From IMG/VR virus record IMGVR_UViG_3300044712_001937, positions 300,703 through 364,702 of that record: 64,000 nucleotides of DNA; one strand, written 5' to 3'. Each line of letters begins with the position of its first letter. The stretch's first letter is position 1. Under the pieces are notes generated by a model, which saw only the letters and a program-made list of their open reading frames with translations, did no database searches and was not told the origin of the DNA. Both the position numbers and the translations under genes were made by a program. Shown piece after piece: positions 7,558 through 38,592 of this stretch.

Positions 7558-10287
7558 TTATTCGATAATAAGTGATGATATTCCGTTCTCATCCAATTCA
7601 ACGTTTATAAGGTAATCAGGATTTACTTCGTGAACTTGTTCAACAATTAAAACCTTTTTCATTCCATTTTTTATTAGTTGTAAAATTTCAATAAATTCAT
7701 CAACACTACCCGCTAAATCTAATTTCCCCATTACTTCATCTAATAGAAAAATAGTAGGTTTTGCTTTGACATTAATTTGGTTTAATGCAAATTTTAATAC
7801 TACACTTGAAAATGTTCTTTCTTTTCCACTGGCACTAATACAATCGATTATTGATTTAGGTCTACTATAATACATTAGTTTAGGTCTAAACGTATCTGGG
7901 TCAAGCCAAACTTTAAATTGTGCAACTGATAATATATTTTCCAATGTTGCGTTTATTTTAGGTAATATATAATTCCCTAACATCTGTCTTGGAATGCCAT
8001 CTCTATGAACACATTTTTTATATAAATTCATTACAGTATCCTGATACTCTTGTTCTTTAAAATCAATAATTAATCGTTCATTATATTTGATTGTTTGTTG
8101 TTTATTACCAACATTTGTTTTATTAATAAAAACATTTTCCTTTTCTTCAGATTCTTCTGATTCAAGAACTAATATTTTATCTTTAGCTGCCTTTATCCCT
8201 TTTTCAATATTTTTATTTTCTTCAATTTGTTTTAAACTATTATCATAATTGTCGATTTTTTTCTGAAGAATATCAATTTTAAGCTCTTCATTTTGAATTT
8301 TTGTTGGAATCTGGTCTAATTCATTTTGTAGTTCCTTACGTTTTTCAACATCATTTTTATCATTAGTTAACTCACCTATTTCAATTAATACAGTTTCCAT
8401 TTCAAGAGCTGCTGTTTGAATGTTTTCATTAACTATTGCAATATCTTTTTGTTTAAGAACTATTGATGCTTTATGTGTTAAATCAATTTCGATTTCTTTA
8501 TCTTTTATTATTTTAGCAATTTTAAACATTTCAGTTTCTTTTAACTTTATAACATCATCAATATTATGTTGATGTTCTTCAGTTAAGGGTTGTCCACAAG
8601 TAGGACAAATTTTACTTTCTTTTAATTCACCTATTTCTTTTTTAAACTTAGTACCATCTTGCTTTAATCTGAATATTTCGCCATTAATTATTTCAATTTT
8701 ATGTTCAATATCACGAATTTCCTGTTCAATAGCTTTAATTTTAAGTTTTTCTTGATATTCATTATTTCTATGAATATCTTTCTTTTGAATTAATTCATTT
8801 AATCTTTTATCATCATAAAAAGATTTTAATGGTTCAATACTTTCATTTAAAATCGATTTTCGTGCATTTAATTCAATAATTTTATTTCTATGAACACTTA
8901 TATCATAATTTACATTATCAACCTTTAAATCGTAAATTTCAGGGTCAATTTTAAATAATTTCTTAGTTAAAGTTTCAACATAAGTTCTTCCAGTTAAAAT
9001 TCTATTTTGAATATCTGGCAATTTAACATTTTCAATTTGATTGATATTTTCTTCTAATATCTTTATATCTTGTTGTAAATTTTCAATTTCATTTGTTTTA
9101 GCTTCAACATTACAAGCAACTCTTATTTTTTCATTATTTCGTCTATTAATAATTTTCCAACCATCCATTTTTTTATCAAAAATATCTAAACCTGAATCAA
9201 ATAATATTGAATCAATAAATGTTGACATATCATTCGATAATATTTTATTTAATGAATCTGAAGTAGTCATTACAATACGCATGAAATTATCATATGTACC
9301 AATAATTGAAGTTAACTTCTTTTGAGTTTTAATTCTTTTATCCTCATCCAATTTTTCTAATGATGTATTATCATTCATTTCTTCATCCGGATTAGAAAGA
9401 ATATAATAATTTAATGTTGTAGATGCACCATCAACATCACCATTTTTATCCTTAGAAATTTCAGTTTTCTTTTTAATACCATAATATTCACCATTTGATT
9501 CAATAACAAGATATGTATCACAAGAAAGTGCACCATTTCTATTATTTACGAATCTTGAGTCACCATATTTTTGCCTAAAATCAGTTTCAGGAGCTTTATT
9601 ATAAAGCAAATATGATAAAAGTTTCATTATAGTAGTTTTTCCTGCGGTGTTAATTCCTGTGATTTGAAATAACCCATCCATATCACGCCAATCAATATCT
9701 AATTGTTCATATGACATAAAATTATTACCACCAAATTTAATTACACTCCATTCACCGCCTATTTCATCACTTAAATCAATTTCATTAAGTACTTCTTCAT
9801 CTAATGCAATAACATCTTCAATTAATTTCTTGTCAGTACCAATTTTTTCTAAAAATTCTCTAAAAATTTCATGTTGGATAGATTTATCACTTACATTCTC
9901 CAGAGTTATATTTTTATTAACTTCAATTTTTTCACTTTCAATAAATTCATTCTTATGTAAGATAATAACATTTTTATATTTACTTTTTAAATATTGACTT
10001 AATTTTCTTTCATTTTCATTATTTCTTGTTTGTGGAAGTGTACACCAAATAAATCTAACATGCATTTCTTTAGTAGCATCATCAATATCAAAATCTAAAT
10101 CATCAAAATCAATATACGGTGTTATTTTAACATTATGATATGAATGATAATTTTCAACAGATATTTCTTCACATGACATTGAATCTAAATTCCATAATAA
10201 ATATCCATGAAATTGACCATCACCCTCAGTAATATCTTGTGACACTAAACTACTTGAGTAACCACCAAAAATTTTTTTATTCTCCAT
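7558..10287 (-). CDS. Rad50/SbcC-like ABC-ATPase carrying the C-terminal part of the Mre11/SbcD nuclease at its N-terminus (3' half of a split gene)
   Basis: Walker A GINTAGKTT, Zn hook CPTCGQPL, signature-like SASGKER and Walker B IFLLDEVMGKLD, with long coiled coils. The N-terminal GYSSSLVSQDITEGDGQFHGYLLWNL resembles the post-GHxH YxGS region of SbcD. Confidence 0.88.
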   Translation of the reverse strand: MENKKIFGGYSSSLVSQDITEGDGQFHGYLLWNLDSMSCEEISVENYHSYHNVKITPYIDFDDLDFDIDDATKEMHVRFIWCTLPQTRNNENERKLSQYLKSKYKNVIILHKNEFIESEKIEVNKNITLENVSDKSIQHEIFREFLEKIGTDKKLIEDVIALDEEVLNEIDLSDEIGGEWSVIKFGGNNFMSYEQLDIDWRDMDGLFQITGINTAGKTTIMKLLSYLLYNKAPETDFRQKYGDSRFVNNRNGALSCDTYLVIESNGEYYGIKKKTEISKDKNGDVDGASTTLNYYILSNPDEEMNDNTSLEKLDEDKRIKTQKKLTSIIGTYDNFMRIVMTTSDSLNKILSNDMSTFIDSILFDSGLDIFDKKMDGWKIINRRNNEKIRVACNVEAKTNEIENLQQDIKILEENINQIENVKLPDIQNRILTGRTYVETLTKKLFKIDPEIYDLKVDNVNYDISVHRNKIIELNARKSILNESIEPLKSFYDDKRLNELIQKKDIHRNNEYQEKLKIKAIEQEIRDIEHKIEIINGEIFRLKQDGTKFKKEIGELKESKICPTCGQPLTEEHQHNIDDVIKLKETEMFKIAKIIKDKEIEIDLTHKASIVLKQKDIAIVNENIQTAALEMETVLIEIGELTNDKNDVEKRKELQNELDQIPTKIQNEELKIDILQKKIDNYDNSLKQIEENKNIEKGIKAAKDKILVLESEESEEKENVFINKTNVGNKQQTIKYNERLIIDFKEQEYQDTVMNLYKKCVHRDGIPRQMLGNYILPKINATLENILSVAQFKVWLDPDTFRPKLMYYSRPKSIIDCISASGKERTFSSVVLKFALNQINVKAKPTIFLLDEVMGKLDLAGSVDEFIEILQLIKNGMKKVLIVEQVHEVNPDYLINVELDENGISSLIIE

Positions 10288-11194
10288 CTTTTAAATTTAT
10301 ATCTTTAATTAATTTATCTTTAAAATCATTTAAATAAATTTCATTTTCCCAATATCTAAACAATTTAAAATTATTTTCATTAGCTAATTCATTTTTATAT
10401 AAATCATTTAAAATGGCAATTTTTTGCATTTTATTTGGGTTAGGAAATATCTTTGGATTTCCATGCCAATAATCACCATCAATCTCAATTAAAATATTTT
10501 TTTGAGTAATAAAAAAATCATATGTTTTATATTTATGATTTTTTTTATCATAAAATATTTTAAATTGTTTCATAAAATTAATATTGTTTTCAATTAAAAT
10601 ATTTTCAACAAATTTTTCAGGTTTTGTGTTTTTATTGAAACACATATCCTGTCCCATTTCCCATGAATATTTTCCATATTTTTTTAAACACGTTTTTTTC
10701 CTTTTTTCTTTAGAATCATCATCAGTTCCGAACCAATATCCAAGTTCTTTATATTTTTTAATCGTACCATTTTTTATTTTATTTCTATATTCCTCAGATT
10801 CCCACAATTTTTTTGCTACTATAGAATGTTTTAATTTAGTTTCATTACTATGTTTCAATATTCTATTATCAGGATTATATATTCCCAATTTATTCCCTAT
10901 TTCATATATATTCCTACATTGTTTTGAACAAAATTGTTTATTTTTTCTCAATTTTAATCTTTTAAAATTAATACCACAATTTAAACAATTAATATTTTCC
11001 CATTTTTCATTTTTTATCCCAGAATTACCAATATGTTGACAATTTTCAGAACAATAAACTTTATTTGGTGTAGATTTTCCACATGTTAAACATTTTCTTT
11101 GTTTATTTTTAAAATCAACTGATTGACATTGTTTTGAACAAAATGTTTTATTTTTTGTTTCTTTACCACAAATTATACAATTATGTGCTTCCAT
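10277..11194 (-). mobile_element. Free-standing homing endonuclease (DUF559/Vsr-like PD-(D/E)xK domain with N-terminal Zn-finger repeats) inserted in the SbcD-SbcC gene
   Basis: Three CxxC...(F/Y)CSxxC repeats and a C-terminal KPEKFVENIL...YDFFI...LIEIDGDYWHG; has its own GTATTTAT motif (11219-11225). Confidence 0.82.
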
Positions 11195-11246
11195 AAAATT
11201 TTACTATATTAGTAAATATAAATACTCATTAATATAATAAAATTTT
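11195..11246 (-). promoter_or_regulatory. RNA hairpin covering the endonuclease translation-initiation region, with a late-promoter motif in the loop
   Basis: 17-bp inverted repeat (11195-11211 / 11230-11246). The single mismatch is a G-U pair in the minus-strand mRNA, and the 18-nt loop contains GTATTTATA. Confidence 0.65.
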
Positions 11247-11860
11247 CAAGACCTATAGAATAATTGTTTTTTATGAATGTGTCCAAAAAAAGACAAATCT
11301 CCTTTAAAATCAGATAATTTATAATATGATTTACTTTTCATTTCAAAACCTGTAGTACTTACACAACCATCAATTGAGTCATGAAATAAATCAATATATG
11401 TTTTAGAATTATCTTTATTTTTTAATATTTCTTTACCTTCTTTACTCAACCAAGGATTATTCTTTTTATCACCGTGATGCCAAACACACCAAACTATATT
11501 ATCATCATTATAAAATCCAGTTTTATCATAATATTTAATATTTGGATTATTAAGTGTTTTAACAATAGCTTTAATGCTATCAATACGTTTTATATTTTTA
11601 ACTCGGCAATCGTGATTTCCACGTATTATTATAACAGGAGCTATAGATGCTAAATTAGATAATAATTCACTTACTAAAATTAATTGTTCACCTTGTAAAT
11701 CAAGGTAATCGTGCACTAAATCACCAACAATTGCAATTCTATCTGGTTTATTTTTATCTAATGATTCAATTAAATTCTTAAATACATACTCATATTCATT
11801 ATTTCTTGTAGGAGTTTTACGCACGTGAATGTCTGCGAGATGTGCTATTTTATTTATCAT
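11246..11860 (-). CDS. Mre11/SbcD-like metallophosphoesterase nuclease, N-terminal part (5' half of a split gene)
   Basis: Motifs ADIH, GDLVH, GNHD, FHD and GHIH, then a TGA stop 7 codons after GHIH. The start is placed at ATG 11860 (MINKIAHL) because a TAnnTTTG promoter lies at 11878-11885. Confidence 0.88.
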   Translation of the reverse strand: MINKIAHLADIHVRKTPTRNNEYEYVFKNLIESLDKNKPDRIAIVGDLVHDYLDLQGEQLILVSELLSNLASIAPVIIIRGNHDCRVKNIKRIDSIKAIVKTLNNPNIKYYDKTGFYNDDNIVWCVWHHGDKKNNPWLSKEGKEILKNKDNSKTYIDLFHDSIDGCVSTTGFEMKSKSYYKLSDFKGDLSFFGHIHKKQLFYRS

Positions 11861-11877
11861 CGTTATATAAATTTTCA

Positions 11878-11885
11878 CAAATATA
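11878..11885 (-). promoter_or_regulatory. Bacteroidota-type primary sigma -7 element (TATATTTG)
   Basis: Matches TAnnTTTG just upstream of the SbcD ATG, with TTGCA further upstream at a -33-like distance. Confidence 0.6.
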
Positions 11886-12033
11886 TCTAAATATTGTATA
11901 TAATGCAAGGATTTTTATAATTAGCCATTTTATCTAATATATTATTAATCTAATGCCAATATGTCAGTTATAACAATTTGGTATGATATTAGATAAATAT
12001 TATTTAAAATAATTTTATAAAAAATATAAACAT

Positions 12034-12438
12034 ATGGAAACAACTAAAAATTCATTATTTAATGCTTTATTAGACGATTTATTATCGATACATTACATTA
12101 TTGATAATACTACAACAAATGATAATGTAAAAGCACCAGTTCATGATGTTATTGAAAATAAAGATGAATATATCATTGAAATGTTATTAGCGGGAGTTAA
12201 AAAAGATGATGTATCAATTGATACTGAAAAAAATAAATTAATCATTAAAGCTGAACGTAAAGAAAAAAGTGATGTTAAATATAATAGAAACCAATCATAT
12301 AAAGGAAAGTATGAAAGAATATTCACTTTACCAGATAATGTAGATATTGAAAATATTAATGCTAATATGGAAGATGGAATACTAATCGTTAAAATTCCAA
12401 AAATTGAAATTAATAAGAAAAAAATTGAGATTAAGTAA
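12034..12438 (+). CDS. Small heat-shock protein (Hsp20/alpha-crystallin family)
   Basis: DVIENKDEYIIEMLLAGVKKDDVSI, LIIKAER, GKYERIFTLPDNVD and ANMEDGILIVKIPK. Confidence 0.93.
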   Translation: METTKNSLFNALLDDLLSIHYIIDNTTTNDNVKAPVHDVIENKDEYIIEMLLAGVKKDDVSIDTEKNKLIIKAERKEKSDVKYNRNQSYKGKYERIFTLPDNVDIENINANMEDGILIVKIPKIEINKKKIEIK

Positions 12439-12460
12439 TGTTAATAGTCTCAAAATGATG

Positions 12461-12488
12461 GGGTGACAATATTAGTCACCCATTTTTT
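12461..12488. terminator. Intrinsic terminator between the convergent Hsp20 and sigma genes
   Basis: gggtgac-aatatta-gtcaccc stem-loop followed by atttttt. Confidence 0.7.
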
Positions 12489-13101
12489 ATTCGTTAAATT
12501 GAAATTCCGGAAAATCTTTTTTTAATTTAGTTTTAATATAATTAACTCGATTACTCACTGTACTACTTGATATATTAAATTCTCTACCAATTTCATTATA
12601 ATCATAGCCATAATTATATTTCATATTAAGAAAAGTAAAATCTTGTGGATTTAATTGAGTAGATATAAAATTAACGGAATTACAATTATCAAAAGCTGTT
12701 GAGCTTGAAGTTGTGAAACAATTATTACTCTGCATTAATGTACCAACTGAATTATTTATAATGAAATTTTCAGAATCTATGGAGCTGGTATAACTTATGG
12801 ATGTTGTATTTGAAGTTAAAGAAATTGTATTACATCGCCATTTATCTATCATATAATGATTAGCAATACTATAAACCCAAGGTTTGAATTTTTTTGTGAT
12901 ATCAAACGAATTTAAGTTCAAAAATATCTTAATCATTATTTCTGACACATCATCATCAACATCACAATTATTTGGATATTTACCTTTTATAAAATGTCTG
13001 ACTATTCTACTATATTTTTCATATAAAAGTTTTTGTGCTGCCTGATTTCCAGACAGTACGTTTTGAATCGTTACTAAATCTTCCTCTATAATTGTTGTCA
13101 T
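12487..13101 (-). CDS. ECF-type sigma-70 family RNA polymerase sigma factor
   Basis: Region 2 (AQKLLYEKY, DDVSEIMIKIF, FKPWVYSIANHYMIDKWR) and region 4 HTH (GYDYNEIGREFNISSSTVSNRVNYIKTKLK). Confidence 0.88.
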   Translation of the reverse strand: MTTIIEEDLVTIQNVLSGNQAAQKLLYEKYSRIVRHFIKGKYPNNCDVDDDVSEIMIKIFLNLNSFDITKKFKPWVYSIANHYMIDKWRCNTISLTSNTTSISYTSSIDSENFIINNSVGTLMQSNNCFTTSSSTAFDNCNSVNFISTQLNPQDFTFLNMKYNYGYDYNEIGREFNISSSTVSNRVNYIKTKLKKDFPEFQFNE

Positions 13102-14146: not shown

Positions 14147-14758
14147 TTAAAGTTTTTTTTCATATTCTAAAAAAGGAAAAAACATTATTAATCTATTAAT
14201 AAAAGCAAGTGGATATATTACTAAATCTGATTTTCCAGTTTGAGGATTCATCATTGCAACATAATTAGCTTGAAGTTCAGAAAATAACCTAATAACGGTT
14301 TCTTTAATTGCATCATTAGATTGAATATTAATTACATCATTAGAAAAATGATTATTATCAATTTGATAATTACCACCTTTAATATTTTGAATTTCACTAA
14401 AAATTTTTCTATAATCTTCAACAGCTTGGTCTCTTTCTTGTTGTAATGTTTCATTTAATGATGTTAATAATGCAACTTGTTCACTAAGCCATTCACTACC
14501 TTTACTTTCATTAGAATTATCAATATCCATCTCAAGTAAATCATCACTTTTACTTTTTACAGTTTCTCCAGTATGATTAAGTGGTATATCTTGTAGTAAC
14601 TCTTCTACTCTTTTTTTTGCTTTTAAATTTCTTTCTTCATCAGGAGATAGTGGTTTAACAACTTCTTTATTAGATTTAACTTTAATATTTGCAGGAACTG
14701 TTTTAGTCTTATTTTTACCTTTAGCTATATTTAGCAATTTTTTACTTTTACCTTCCAT
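14147..14758 (-). CDS. Hypothetical protein with a coiled coil
   Basis: 203-aa ORF with an upstream GTATTTAT motif (14797-14803). Confidence 0.75.
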   Translation of the reverse strand: MEGKSKKLLNIAKGKNKTKTVPANIKVKSNKEVVKPLSPDEERNLKAKKRVEELLQDIPLNHTGETVKSKSDDLLEMDIDNSNESKGSEWLSEQVALLTSLNETLQQERDQAVEDYRKIFSEIQNIKGGNYQIDNNHFSNDVINIQSNDAIKETVIRLFSELQANYVAMMNPQTGKSDLVIYPLAFINRLIMFFPFLEYEKKL

Positions 14759-37761: not shown

Positions 37762-38592
37762 TTATTTTAATCCTTGTATTAGGTTATCGCCATATTTTAT
37801 ACCATCATAACCATACTTCATTGCTTTTTCAGCAATTGCTTTAGCTTTTAAATTATTTGACGGTACATTATTTTGGCTACTTATTTTTTCAAAATTTATA
37901 TTTGGAAACCATATTTTTGCTAATATATCAACAGGTTGTTGACTTTTTTTTAAAACTAATCCTAATTCATGAGTATCTAATAAATTTTCAAAATCAATTT
38001 GATATCTATCAAATCCATCAATAGGTGCTAATGTAAAGAAATTACCTACTACAGAATTTTCAGAAATAGGTTCTTTTCTATAACCAATAATGGTTTTCTG
38101 ATTTTTCGTTGGATTTTCAATTTGAATATTTTTATTATCTTCTTCTAACGTTGCTAAAAATTCACTATCGCTATTACCCGAATTAATTTGATTATCTTGA
38201 TTAATTACATCTTGTGTTTCAACTTCTTCTAATGAACGAGATTGTTCATACTCAAAAATGTCTTGTATTTTATTCAACAATCTACAAGCATCTTTAAAAT
38301 TCATATCAAGTTTAACGGCTTTTAATGGTTTTTTATCATAAAGAGCACGAGCAAATCTATGATGACCATCACATATTTTATTATCTTCAGCAATCCAAAT
38401 AGGATTTTTATCATCTAAAGTACATTTACCAACTTCATCAGAAAATGTTATTCCTTGAGATGGTTGTAATTCATCCGGAGTTACTTCAATAAAATTATAA
38501 CCAATACCTTCATCATCTAATTTCTGCACAATAACATCATATGGCGCAGACATTTGTGGAAGAAAATATGGTTTATATCTTAAATCAATCAT
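37762..38592 (-). CDS. ParB/sulfiredoxin-like N-terminal domain protein with a second C-terminal domain
   Basis: ELQPSQ...PIWIAEDNKICDGHHRF; the C-terminal region ends KAMKYGYDGIKY; late motif (38610-38616). Confidence 0.7.
   Translation of the reverse strand: MIDLRYKPYFLPQMSAPYDVIVQKLDDEGIGYNFIEVTPDELQPSQGITFSDEVGKCTLDDKNPIWIAEDNKICDGHHRFARALYDKKPLKAVKLDMNFKDACRLLNKIQDIFEYEQSRSLEEVETQDVINQDNQINSGNSDSEFLATLEEDNKNIQIENPTKNQKTIIGYRKEPISENSVVGNFFTLAPIDGFDRYQIDFENLLDTHELGLVLKKSQQPVDILAKIWFPNINFEKISSQNNVPSNNLKAKAIAEKAMKYGYDGIKYGDNLIQGLK

What the first reader, a model, noticed from the sequence alone, without database searches (positions are those of the whole stretch)
11195..11246. T4-style translational hairpin with a late promoter in its loop controls the inserted endonuclease
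Seen: the whole spacer between the SbcD stop and the endonuclease ATG is a 17-bp inverted repeat (mRNA arms AAAAUUUUAUUAUAUUA / UAAUAUAGUAAAAUUUU, one G-U pair). Its 18-nt loop holds GTATTTATA, and the 3' arm abuts the ATG. Established: T4 and Aeh1 endonuclease genes (I-TevI, mobE) are silenced on early read-through transcripts by such a hairpin and expressed from a late promoter inside it. Inference: the same logic operates in an unrelated Shine-Dalgarno-less system, occluding an A-rich leader instead of an SD. This independently supports GTATTTAT as the late promoter. The stem is almost all A-U, so it is weak.
Basis: partly seen in the sequence, partly recalled or inferred. Interest (0 to 1): 0.6.

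Follow-up and report, generated by a model that had tools for sequence, protein, structure and literature searches.

The report
Promoter-in-hairpin switch before a homing endonuclease
A selfish endonuclease gene has split a DNA-repair gene of a 365-kb phage, and it is preceded by an RNA hairpin that hides its start site and holds the phage's late-gene promoter motif in its loop; this is the arrangement phage T4 uses, found here in a phage group that does not use Shine-Dalgarno sequences.

Summary
On the minus strand, 11246-11195 forms a 17-bp stem with one G-U pair and an 18-nt loop that holds GTATTTATA. The 3' arm ends one base before the endonuclease ATG. The fold is -18 kcal/mol, z = -5, and no shuffle of 200 matches it.

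GTATTTAT is the most enriched word upstream of genes in this genome (73 of 481 ORFs, 4.6 expected). It usually lies 14-17 nt before the ATG and precedes the terminase, portal and tail-sheath genes, so it is very probably a late-type promoter.

The "SbcD stop" is really the break point of a fused SbcD-SbcC gene, which a related phage carries uninterrupted.

The T4-style reading is supported indirectly, by two lines of evidence:
- Within this genome, five of the six motif genes whose start site is most strongly occluded only on read-through RNA are homing endonucleases. They belong to three nuclease families.
- Homologues of this endonuclease in other phages, often at the same site, carry hairpins with unrelated arm sequences and TATTTAT in the loop.

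No RNA data exist, so the transcription start and the timing remain inferred. I rate it a convergent variant of a known mechanism, of moderate interest.

The parts
11878..11885 (-). TATATTTG, a Bacteroidetes-type -7 box (TAnnTTTG), 17 nt before the ATG of the N-terminal fragment. It is the presumed early or host-type promoter of the split sbcDC unit.
   Evidence: It is the only TAnnTTTG on this strand between 12040 and 10200. The word is enriched upstream of genes (21 genes, 2.9 expected).
11246..11860 (-). N-terminal fragment (metallophosphatase motifs I-V, ending just after GHIH) of a fused SbcD-SbcC (Mre11-Rad50-like) gene. The likely start is ATG 11860 and the stop is TGA 11248-11246.
   Evidence: Pfam Metallophos 9.8e-16. 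PHROG 35725 and 100. 68% identity to residues 6-201 of the uninterrupted 1110-aa gene in L001.
10288..11260 (-). Inserted endonuclease cassette of about 970 nt: a short new tail with the stop codon, the hairpin and promoter motif, and the endonuclease ORF. None of it has a counterpart in the intact gene of L001.
   Evidence: DNA and protein alignments with L001. The boundaries are accurate to a few bases.
11230..11246 (-). 5' arm of the hairpin (17 nt). It starts at the last base of the upstream stop codon.
11212..11229 (-). 18-nt loop. It forms a weak 6-bp inner helix of its own.
11217..11225 (-). GTATTTATA, the late-type promoter motif. The 8-mer GTATTTAT ends 23 nt before the ATG.
   Evidence: The same word precedes the terminase, portal, tail sheath and virion protein genes.
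11195..11211 (-). 3' arm of the hairpin (17 nt). It covers positions -17 to -1 of the endonuclease start region.
10277..11194 (-). Free-standing homing endonuclease of 305 aa. It has N-terminal treble-clef zinc ribbons and a C-terminal Vsr/DUF559-like PD-(D/E)xK nuclease domain. E237, D239 and H244 are invariant in the family.
   Evidence: PHROG 9084 and 559. 38 homologues. Pfam DUF559 in 12 of 23 and Vsr in 9 of 23 family members. Invariant columns.
7558..10287 (-). C-terminal fragment of 909 aa: the SbcD capping part plus the SbcC/Rad50 ATPase with its zinc hook. Its ATG overlaps the end of the endonuclease ORF by 11 nt.
   Evidence: Pfam AAA_23 and Rad50_zn_hook. 59% identity to residues 208-1107 of the L001 gene. 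Junction read.

Best explanation
The hairpin is a translational gate on a free-standing homing endonuclease that has inserted into, and split, a fused sbcD-sbcC gene.

The two halves of the repair gene have to be transcribed together from the host-type promoter upstream of the N-terminal fragment. The endonuclease ORF therefore rides on that read-through mRNA. On it, the 17-bp stem and its extensions bury the A/U-rich leader (-17 to -1) and flank the AUG. In a Shine-Dalgarno-less, Bacteroidetes-type system, an unstructured leader is the main determinant of initiation, so the endonuclease is kept silent.

The loop carries the phage's late-type promoter word, GTATTTAT. RNA that starts a few bases after it lacks the 5' arm, has an open 15-20-nt leader, and is translated.

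Shown here:
- the structure and its statistics;
- the identity and distribution of the motif;
- the insertion;
- the recurrence of the design.

Inferred, not shown:
- that the motif is a promoter active late;
- that transcription starts inside the hairpin;
- that structure blocks initiation in vivo.
For: Structure:
- -18 kcal/mol, z = -5, 0 of 200 shuffles.
- Opening cost is 15.9 kcal/mol on long RNA and 0.5-3.8 kcal/mol on RNA starting 0-12 nt after the motif.

Motif:
- GTATTTAT lies upstream of 73 of 481 ORFs, with 4.6 expected. The usual gap to the ATG is 14-17 nt.
- It often lies directly after G+C-stem/T-run terminators.
- It precedes the terminase large subunit, portal, tail sheath, virion and tail-spike-like proteins and an endolysin-domain protein.

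Transcription unit:
- One TAnnTTTG box upstream, none inside, and no terminator-like site in the unit.

Recurrence in this genome:
- Over 71 motif genes I compared the start-region opening cost on long and short RNA. Five of the top six are homing endonucleases: HNH at 112397 and 144463, GIY-YIG at 140226 and 291614, and this one.
- The endonuclease median is 12.2 kcal/mol and the median of the rest is 2.7 (Mann-Whitney p = 4e-4, hypergeometric p = 5.5e-5). The result holds for assumed start offsets of 3, 6 and 9 nt.

Recurrence in homologues:
- The same endonuclease family sits at the same sbcD site in L018, L020, L021, L022, L026 and others.
- Their hairpins have unrelated arm sequences and a TATTTAT-type word in the loop: L021, a perfect 16-17 bp stem, z = -8.6; L022, z = -5.7; L018, z = -4.8; L026, z = -4.9.
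- Of 39 non-redundant upstream regions, 24 have TATTTAT within 45 nt of the ATG. In those, the flanks are complementary well beyond permuted pairs: median -13.05 against -5.85 kcal/mol, p = 5e-8, and 16 of 24 at -10 or below against 4.6 expected.

RNA level rather than DNA level:
- The sense fold is more stable than the antisense fold in 36 of 39 regions. The background rate in this genome is 60%.
- For the window the values are -18.0 and -8.3 kcal/mol.

Host system:
- SD-like words occur in 3.7% of genes. A is enriched at -3 and at -11 to -13.
- In Flavobacterium johnsoniae, initiation is tuned by mRNA structure and by A at -3 (PMC6847099).

Precedent:
- T4 I-TevI, I-TevII, I-TevIII and segB, and Aeh1 mobE (PMC2988022).
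Against: - There is no transcript evidence. No public RNA run holds this DNA, and the DNA runs show no variants in the hairpin.
- "Late" rests only on the kinds of genes behind the motif. The motif also precedes a helicase and a tRNA nucleotidyltransferase.
- The 5' arm begins at the stop codon of the upstream fragment. Each terminating ribosome should melt part of it, so silencing may be leaky or may be a form of coupling.
- The closest homologue with DNA (L020, 72% identity) has two mismatches in the stem (z about -1) and GTTTTTAT in place of the motif.
- 15 of 39 homologue upstream regions lack an exact TATTTAT, and about half have z above -2.
- Within the TTTTGTTG/CAACAAAA subfamily only one compensatory pair was found.
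- It is not known how the C-terminal fragment is translated when the endonuclease is silent. Its own start region is open, at 3.7 kcal/mol.
Confidence: 0.7

Rival explanations
1. The hairpin is a translational coupling device. It keeps the endonuclease start closed unless a ribosome finishing the N-terminal fragment melts the 5' arm. Endonuclease synthesis would then be tied at a low ratio to translation of the repair gene, not to the time of infection.
For: The 5' arm starts at the last base of the stop codon in the window and in L020. It starts within 0-7 nt of the stop in L018, L021, L022 and L026. The spacer is exactly 51 nt in five related contigs.
Against: This reading does not explain why the promoter word sits in the loop in 24 of 39 homologues. 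The same design occurs before endonuclease genes that follow tRNA genes, where no upstream ORF is translated: genome 140226 and 112397. Local hairpins refold much faster than 30S subunits bind; this last point is general knowledge, not tested here.
Confidence: 0.12
2. The inverted repeat acts as DNA. It would be a palindromic operator around the promoter for a dimeric regulator, or for the endonuclease itself in the way I-TevI represses its own late promoter.
For: The arms flank the promoter word symmetrically. I-TevI autorepression at its late promoter is established (PMC2988022). The TTTTGTTG/CAACAAAA arms are conserved as sequence in one subfamily.
Against: The arms are unrelated in sequence between subfamilies although the protein family is the same. 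The 3' arm is positioned relative to the ATG, which it abuts or includes, rather than at a fixed distance from the motif. G-U pairs make the sense RNA more stable than the antisense in 36 of 39 regions. The region shows no similarity to the rebuilt homing site (score 11 against 9.9 +/- 1.7; 144 of 500 shuffles as good).
Confidence: 0.08
3. The hairpin is an intrinsic terminator, attenuator, or RNA processing and stability element at the 3' end of the N-terminal fragment message.
For: It lies directly after a stop codon, and its 3' arm ends in UUUU.
Against: Terminators in this genome have G+C-containing stems followed by runs of 6 or more T. The consensus scan reports none here. The homologous hairpins in L021, L022 and L026 have no U tract. 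Termination here would cut off the C-terminal 909-aa fragment of the same enzyme, which has no other promoter box.
Confidence: 0.05
4. The hairpin is a chance palindrome in 23% G+C DNA.
For: The stem contains no G-C pair, and AT-rich sequence folds back easily.
Against: 0 of 200 dinucleotide shuffles fold as well. First-order Markov copies of the genome yield 2-6 perfect stems of 12 bp or more, against 50 in the real genome. The design recurs in homologues and in other endonuclease genes.
Confidence: 0.02

Closest known systems
Phage T4 I-TevI in the td intron (also I-TevII and I-TevIII): a late or middle promoter placed so that only read-through RNA forms the hairpin that hides the ribosome binding site
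   Same: The endonuclease ORF is embedded in an earlier transcription unit. A hairpin occludes its start region on long RNA. A late-type promoter lies inside or next to the hairpin, so late RNA lacks the 5' arm (PMC2988022).
   Different: Here the endonuclease is free-standing and not in an intron (no Rfam hit). It is Vsr/DUF559-like, not GIY-YIG or HNH. The promoter word is GTATTTAT, not TATAAATA. There is no Shine-Dalgarno sequence to hide, so the A/U-rich leader is hidden instead. No operator resembling the homing site was found.
Phage Aeh1 mobE, which splits nrdA into two genes (a genes-in-pieces arrangement with a regulatory hairpin)
   Same: A free-standing endonuclease splits an essential or conserved enzyme gene into two ORFs that must both be expressed. 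A hairpin sequesters the endonuclease start region and a late promoter is associated with it (PMC2988022; PMC3045599 listed).
   Different: The target gene is a fused sbcD-sbcC, cut just after metallophosphatase motif V. The nuclease family and the phage lineage differ, and so does the host translation system. Whether the two fragments reassemble has not been tested.
Phage T4 segB, a GIY-YIG endonuclease in the tRNA gene cluster
   Same: Two endonucleases in this genome, GIY-YIG at 140226 and HNH at 112397, sit directly 3' of tRNA genes. Both have the motif-in-hairpin design.
   Different: These are other loci of the genome, not the locus of the finding. Homology to segB itself was not tested.
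T4 late genes e, soc, 25 and 26, whose ribosome binding sites are hidden on early read-through RNA
   Same: The general principle is the same: long early transcripts are silent and short late transcripts are translated (PMC2988022). A few non-endonuclease genes here show it too, for example window 14147-14758 and 37762-38592.
   Different: In this genome the effect is concentrated in endonuclease genes.
Vsr/DUF559-type PD-(D/E)xK homing endonucleases, such as the EDxHD family member I-Bth0305I (named from my own knowledge, not checked here)
   Same: The C-terminal E-x-D-G-D-Y-W-H-G block is invariant in the family. Pfam DUF559, Vsr, PvuRts1I-like and MTES_1575 match many members, and NUMOD3 matches some.
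   Different: No solved structure matches by sequence. The window protein itself reaches Pfam only through its zinc ribbon. Membership of the EDxHD family was not tested.

Membership tests
T4-type promoter-in-hairpin translational control of homing endonucleases | The endonuclease ORF lies on read-through transcripts of an earlier-expressed host gene. | tested here: met
   Met at sequence level only. There is one TAnnTTTG box upstream of the N-terminal fragment, none inside the unit, and no terminator-like site. The C-terminal fragment of the same enzyme lies downstream.
T4-type promoter-in-hairpin translational control of homing endonucleases | A stable hairpin occludes the translation initiation region on the long RNA. 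| tested here: met
   -18 kcal/mol, z = -5. The opening cost is 15.9 kcal/mol, against 3.7-6.2 for the neighbouring starts.
T4-type promoter-in-hairpin translational control of homing endonucleases | A late promoter is placed so that late RNA lacks the 5' arm. | tested here: inconclusive
   The genome's structural-gene upstream word lies in the loop. Any start 0-12 nt after it frees the start region. No transcription start data exist.
T4-type promoter-in-hairpin translational control of homing endonucleases | The Shine-Dalgarno sequence is the sequestered element. | tested here: not met
   There is no SD before this gene, and the genome is SD-less. The A/U-rich leader is sequestered instead. 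One homologue, L027, does pair GAGGAG with CUCUCC.
T4-type promoter-in-hairpin translational control of homing endonucleases | The endonuclease is translated late only. | not testable with these tools
   This needs infection time courses or reporter assays.
Free-standing homing endonuclease | A nuclease domain of a family known among homing endonucleases. | tested here: met
   PHROG 9084 "homing endonuclease" 2.5e-13. At family level, DUF559, Vsr and NUMOD3. E237, D239 and H244 are invariant.
Free-standing homing endonuclease | Presence/absence polymorphism at a conserved site of a conserved gene. | tested here: met
   L001 has the uninterrupted 1110-aa gene. The window copy is interrupted between residues about 201 and 208.
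Free-standing homing endonuclease | The same endonuclease family occupies the same site in diverged hosts. | tested here: met
   L018: the sbcD fragment is 36% identical and the endonuclease 37% identical, at the same site. L020, L021, L022, L025, L026 and L027 have the same gene order.
Free-standing homing endonuclease | Site-specific cleavage of the allele that lacks the endonuclease. | not testable with these tools
   This is a biochemical assay.
Intron-encoded endonuclease (group I intron) | A structured intron RNA surrounds the ORF and restores the reading frame by splicing. | tested here: not met
   No Rfam match at E up to 1 in 9800-12100. Only about 66 nt lie between the point where homology to the intact gene ends and the ATG. 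The ORF end overlaps the downstream ATG.
Intrinsic terminator | A G+C-rich stem followed by a U tract. | tested here: not met
   The stem has no G-C pair. The terminator scan does not report it. The genome's real terminators look different.

The most novel reading that the evidence does not exclude
The promoter-in-hairpin unit may be a portable module that travels with homing endonuclease cassettes through a large, uncultivated clade of AT-rich phages that probably infect Bacteroidetes. Unrelated nuclease families (Vsr-like, GIY-YIG, HNH) would have acquired it independently. That would make timed, structure-only translational gating a general condition for endonuclease persistence that does not depend on Shine-Dalgarno pairing. 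It would also identify TATTTAT as the late promoter of the whole clade.
Probability: 0.45. Interest if true: 0.6.

Novelty: new variant of a known kind. Interest (0 to 1): 0.5.

Why it matters
- It extends a regulatory design known only from T-even-type phages to an unrelated group of uncultivated jumbo phages. Every part is different: the promoter word, the nuclease family, the target gene, and a translation system without Shine-Dalgarno pairing. This argues that the design is a convergent requirement for selfish endonucleases that sit inside useful genes.
- It gives a concrete, testable late-promoter candidate, GTATTTAT, for these phages.
- It offers a natural example of translation control by structure alone in a Bacteroidetes-type system.
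- It documents a new genes-in-pieces case, a split Mre11-Rad50-like fusion.

Tried and rejected
- **Transcript evidence.** One search of public runs found four DNA metagenome runs (rhizosphere) and no RNA run. The contigs were identical across the hairpin and showed no endonuclease-free variant.
- **Group I intron or other known RNA.** No Rfam match.
- **I-TevI-like operator.** There is no significant similarity between the rebuilt homing site and the promoter/hairpin region.
- **Terminator reading.** Rejected; see the rival explanations.
- **Close relatives in the GenBank phage collection.** No match.
- **Single-protein scan of IMG/VR for the endonuclease.** None found. The profile scan found 80 loci.
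- **Paralogues of this endonuclease in the genome by tblastn.** Only itself. PHROG profiles found more distant copies.
- **Solved structures by sequence.** Nothing below E = 0.1.
- **Classical covariation.** RNAalifold on the TTTTGTTG subfamily gave 6 conserved pairs and one compensatory change, which is weak. The structural argument rests on arm turnover between subfamilies instead.
- **DNA for three close homologues (P0004, P0005, P0006).** Not available. Only gene coordinates were returned.
- **Not used.** The large representative-protein search, structure prediction and complex prediction were not needed. No alternative genetic code was used.

Full report
**Setting**

The window is the last 64 kb of a single 364,702-bp virus record with direct terminal repeats. 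It is rated complete and has 26% G+C. Public runs that hold it are rhizosphere metagenomes. Genes around the finding lie on the minus strand.

**The observation**

Reading the minus strand gives this order:
- stop codon TGA at 11248-11246;
- a 17-nt 5' arm at 11246-11230;
- an 18-nt loop at 11229-11212, with GTATTTATA at 11225-11217;
- a 17-nt 3' arm at 11211-11195;
- ATG at 11194.

All 17 positions pair, one of them as U-G. The fold is -18.0 kcal/mol against -7.5 +/- 2.1 for dinucleotide shuffles (z = -5.0, 0 of 200 as good). It includes a small inner helix made by the motif itself and a 3-bp outer helix that takes in the G of the AUG. The stem is not especially weak in effect. Freeing positions -15 to +5 costs 15.9 kcal/mol on read-through RNA, while the starts of the two flanking fragments cost 6.2 and 3.7.

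**What the flanking genes are**

- The upstream ORF is a metallophosphatase (Pfam Metallophos, PHROG SbcD-like). It stops a few codons after motif V, GHIH.
- The downstream 909-aa ORF carries AAA_23 and the Rad50 zinc hook. Its first roughly 180 residues continue the SbcD fold.
- A related IMG/VR phage contig, L001, has one uninterrupted 1110-aa gene. The window's N-terminal fragment matches residues 6-201 (68% identity) and the C-terminal fragment matches residues 208-1107 (59%).
- So the "SbcD stop" is the break point of a fused sbcD-sbcC gene, and a cassette of about 970 nt (about 11260-10288) has been inserted.
- The cassette encodes a 305-aa protein with treble-clef zinc ribbons and a C-terminal nuclease block. 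PHROG calls it a homing endonuclease. Its homologues match Pfam DUF559, Vsr and related PD-(D/E)xK families, and sometimes NUMOD3.
- The end of the endonuclease ORF overlaps the ATG of the C-terminal fragment by 11 nt.
- No Rfam family, including group I introns, matches the region. This is a free-standing endonuclease that has made a gene in pieces.

**The motif**

- GTATTTATA occurs 22 times in the window against 4.5 expected, 19 times on the coding strand.
- In the whole genome, GTATTTAT is the most enriched 8-mer in the 60 nt upstream of ORFs: 73 of 481 ORFs against 4.6 expected.
- The distance to the ATG is sharply peaked at 14-17 nt.
- In several places it is the only conserved element between a G+C-stem/T-run terminator and the next ATG. 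That is what a promoter should look like.
- Genes behind it include the terminase large subunit, portal, tail sheath, virion and tail-spike-like proteins and a large endolysin-domain protein. They also include a helicase and a tRNA nucleotidyltransferase.
- I therefore accept "late-type promoter" as the best reading, but the timing is inferred.
- The split repair gene has a different upstream element: TATATTTG at 11885-11878. This fits the Bacteroidetes -7 box TAnnTTTG (the consensus is from my own knowledge). It is the only such box on this strand between 12040 and 10200, and the word is itself enriched upstream of genes.
- The genome lacks Shine-Dalgarno sequences. SD-like 4-mers occur before 3.7% of genes against 5.5% in random windows. 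G is 5-8% in the leader. A is enriched at -3 and at -11 to -13. This matches what is described for Flavobacterium johnsoniae, where initiation is tuned by mRNA structure and A at -3 (PMC6847099).

**Does the T4 logic apply?**

For I-TevI the inhibitory structure forms only on transcripts from upstream promoters, and a late promoter is placed so that late RNA cannot form it. Similar arrangements exist for I-TevII, I-TevIII, segB and Aeh1 mobE (PMC2988022).

At this locus, any RNA that starts 0-12 nt after the 8-mer has a start-region opening cost of 0.5-3.8 kcal/mol, against 15.9 on long RNA. The C-terminal fragment has no promoter box of its own and there is no terminator in the unit. Read-through across the endonuclease ORF is therefore required for the repair enzyme to be made. 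That read-through creates the need to silence the endonuclease.

**Internal replication in this genome**

- PHROG profiles find at least 14 endonuclease-like ORFs in the genome.
- For the 71 genes preceded by the motif, I computed the start-region opening cost on an RNA starting 80 nt upstream of the ATG, minus the cost on an RNA starting just after the motif.
- Five of the six largest values belong to homing endonuclease genes of three nuclease families: HNH at 112397, a GIY-YIG fragment at 291614, this gene, GIY-YIG at 140226, and HNH at 144463.
- The endonuclease median is 12.2 kcal/mol and the median of the others is 2.7 (Mann-Whitney p = 4e-4, hypergeometric p = 5.5e-5 for the top six). 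The result is stable for assumed start offsets of 3, 6 and 9 nt.
- The short-RNA cost does not differ between the two groups.
- Pairing each upstream flank with the downstream flank of another gene gives far fewer strong duplexes: 7 observed at -10 kcal/mol or below, against 1.4 expected.
- The GIY-YIG fragment has a perfect 15-bp stem and again an 18-nt loop with the motif, and its 3' arm contains the ATG.

**External replication in homologues**

- The word search found 38 homologues of the endonuclease.
- Every homologue whose context could be read at 48-72% identity sits between a roughly 200-aa metallophosphatase fragment and a roughly 900-aa AAA_23 protein. Four of them have a spacer of exactly 51 nt, like the window.
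- More distant members (34-40% identity) occupy the same site in sbcD genes that are only 36% identical to this one.
- Their upstream regions fold into hairpins with arms unrelated in sequence to the window's. L021 has a perfect 16-17 bp stem that includes the AUG, with GTATTTAT in the loop (z = -8.6). L022 has z = -5.7, L018 z = -4.8 with CTATTTAT in the loop, and L026 z = -4.9.
- One homologue, L027, pairs CUCUCC with a true GAGGAG just before its ATG.
- A profile scan of IMG/VR added 80 loci.
- Of 39 non-redundant upstream regions with a reliable start, 24 have TATTTAT within 45 nt of the ATG. In those, the flanks of the motif are complementary far beyond permuted pairs: median -13.05 against -5.85 kcal/mol, p = 5e-8, and 16 of 24 at -10 or below against 4.6 expected.
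- The sense strand folds better than the antisense strand in 36 of 39. The background rate over all upstream regions of this genome is 60%. This favours an RNA structure over a DNA palindrome.

**Weak points**

- There are no RNA data, and the DNA runs show no variation in the hairpin.
- The closest homologue with DNA, L020, keeps the 5' arm but has three changes in the 3' arm. One preserves pairing as G-U and two break it. It also has GTTTTTAT for the motif, and its fold is not significant. The module can therefore decay.
- Inside the TTTTGTTG/CAACAAAA subfamily the arms are conserved as sequence, with only one compensatory pair. Classical covariation is thin, and the structural argument rests on turnover between subfamilies.
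- The 5' arm begins in the stop codon of the N-terminal fragment. Terminating ribosomes should open it, so I keep translational coupling as the main rival. Against that rival, the same design occurs before endonuclease genes that follow tRNA genes, where nothing is translated upstream.
- I found no I-TevI-like operator.

**Verdict**

The mechanism is a known kind, built here from entirely different parts and in a Shine-Dalgarno-less setting. I rate it a new variant of a known kind, with interest 0.5 and confidence 0.7 in the mechanism.

Noticed in passing
window 7558-11860 (-); L001:5986-9318: sbcD and sbcC form one fused 1110-aa gene in a related phage. Here the endonuclease splits the gene a few codons after metallophosphatase motif V (GHIH). 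This is a genes-in-pieces case like Aeh1 nrdA/mobE. The end of the endonuclease ORF overlaps the ATG of the downstream fragment in the window and in all homologous loci read.
   Followed up: yes
genome G000:C1 140226-140906 (+) and 112397-112951 (+) (L009, L007): A GIY-YIG and an HNH homing endonuclease sit directly 3' of tRNA genes, as T4 segB does. Each has GTATTTAT flanked by arms that bury its ATG.
   Followed up: partly
genome G000:C1 291571-291618 (+): A truncated GIY-YIG gene (57 codons, then stops) keeps a perfect 15-bp stem with an 18-nt loop holding the motif. Its 3' arm contains the ATG.
   Followed up: partly
genome G000:C1 159451-159496 (+): A perfect 17-bp hairpin ends 2 nt before the ATG of gene 159499-160521. 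Its 12-nt loop holds TAAATTTG, the host-type TAnnTTTG box. This is the same architecture with the other promoter class. The gene was not annotated.
   Followed up: no
genome G000:C1 upstream of 176768, 208507, 209027 (+): A second conserved upstream word, TTTTCGTATATAGAT, lies directly after terminators and precedes about 18 genes. It is probably another promoter class.
   Followed up: no
window 11217-11225 and all motif sites: The reverse complement of GTATTTATA is TATAAATAC, which contains the T4 late promoter consensus TATAAATA. Strand bias and the position before ATGs fix the functional orientation as GTATTTATA, so the resemblance may be coincidental.
   Followed up: no
window 37762-38592 (-): A 276-aa protein with a ParB/sulfiredoxin-like DGHHR motif has its ATG paired with the CATCGTAT of its own promoter word. 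Compared with other motif genes that have CATAGTAT...ATACTATG, this is a both-sided change. It ranks among the six most occluded starts.
   Followed up: partly
whole genome, positions -30 to +6 of 481 ORFs: There is no Shine-Dalgarno signal. A is enriched at -3 (0.64) and at -11 to -13 (0.62-0.65), and G is at 5-8%. This Bacteroidetes-like initiation signature suggests the host phylum.
   Followed up: partly
L027:2430-2503: In one homologue the hairpin pairs CUCUCC with GAGGAG 5 nt before the ATG. This is classical Shine-Dalgarno sequestration within the same endonuclease family, presumably in a phage of an SD-using host.
   Followed up: no
window 12034-13101; contig of P0004: The gene order sigma-70/ECF-like factor, divergent Hsp20, split sbcD, endonuclease, sbcC is conserved in a relative. 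The phage sigma factor next door is a candidate reader of GTATTTAT.
   Followed up: no
genome G000:C1 100143-100194: A 15-bp perfect palindrome is formed by two divergent copies of the promoter word. Some palindromes in this genome are therefore back-to-back promoters and not RNA hairpins.
   Followed up: no
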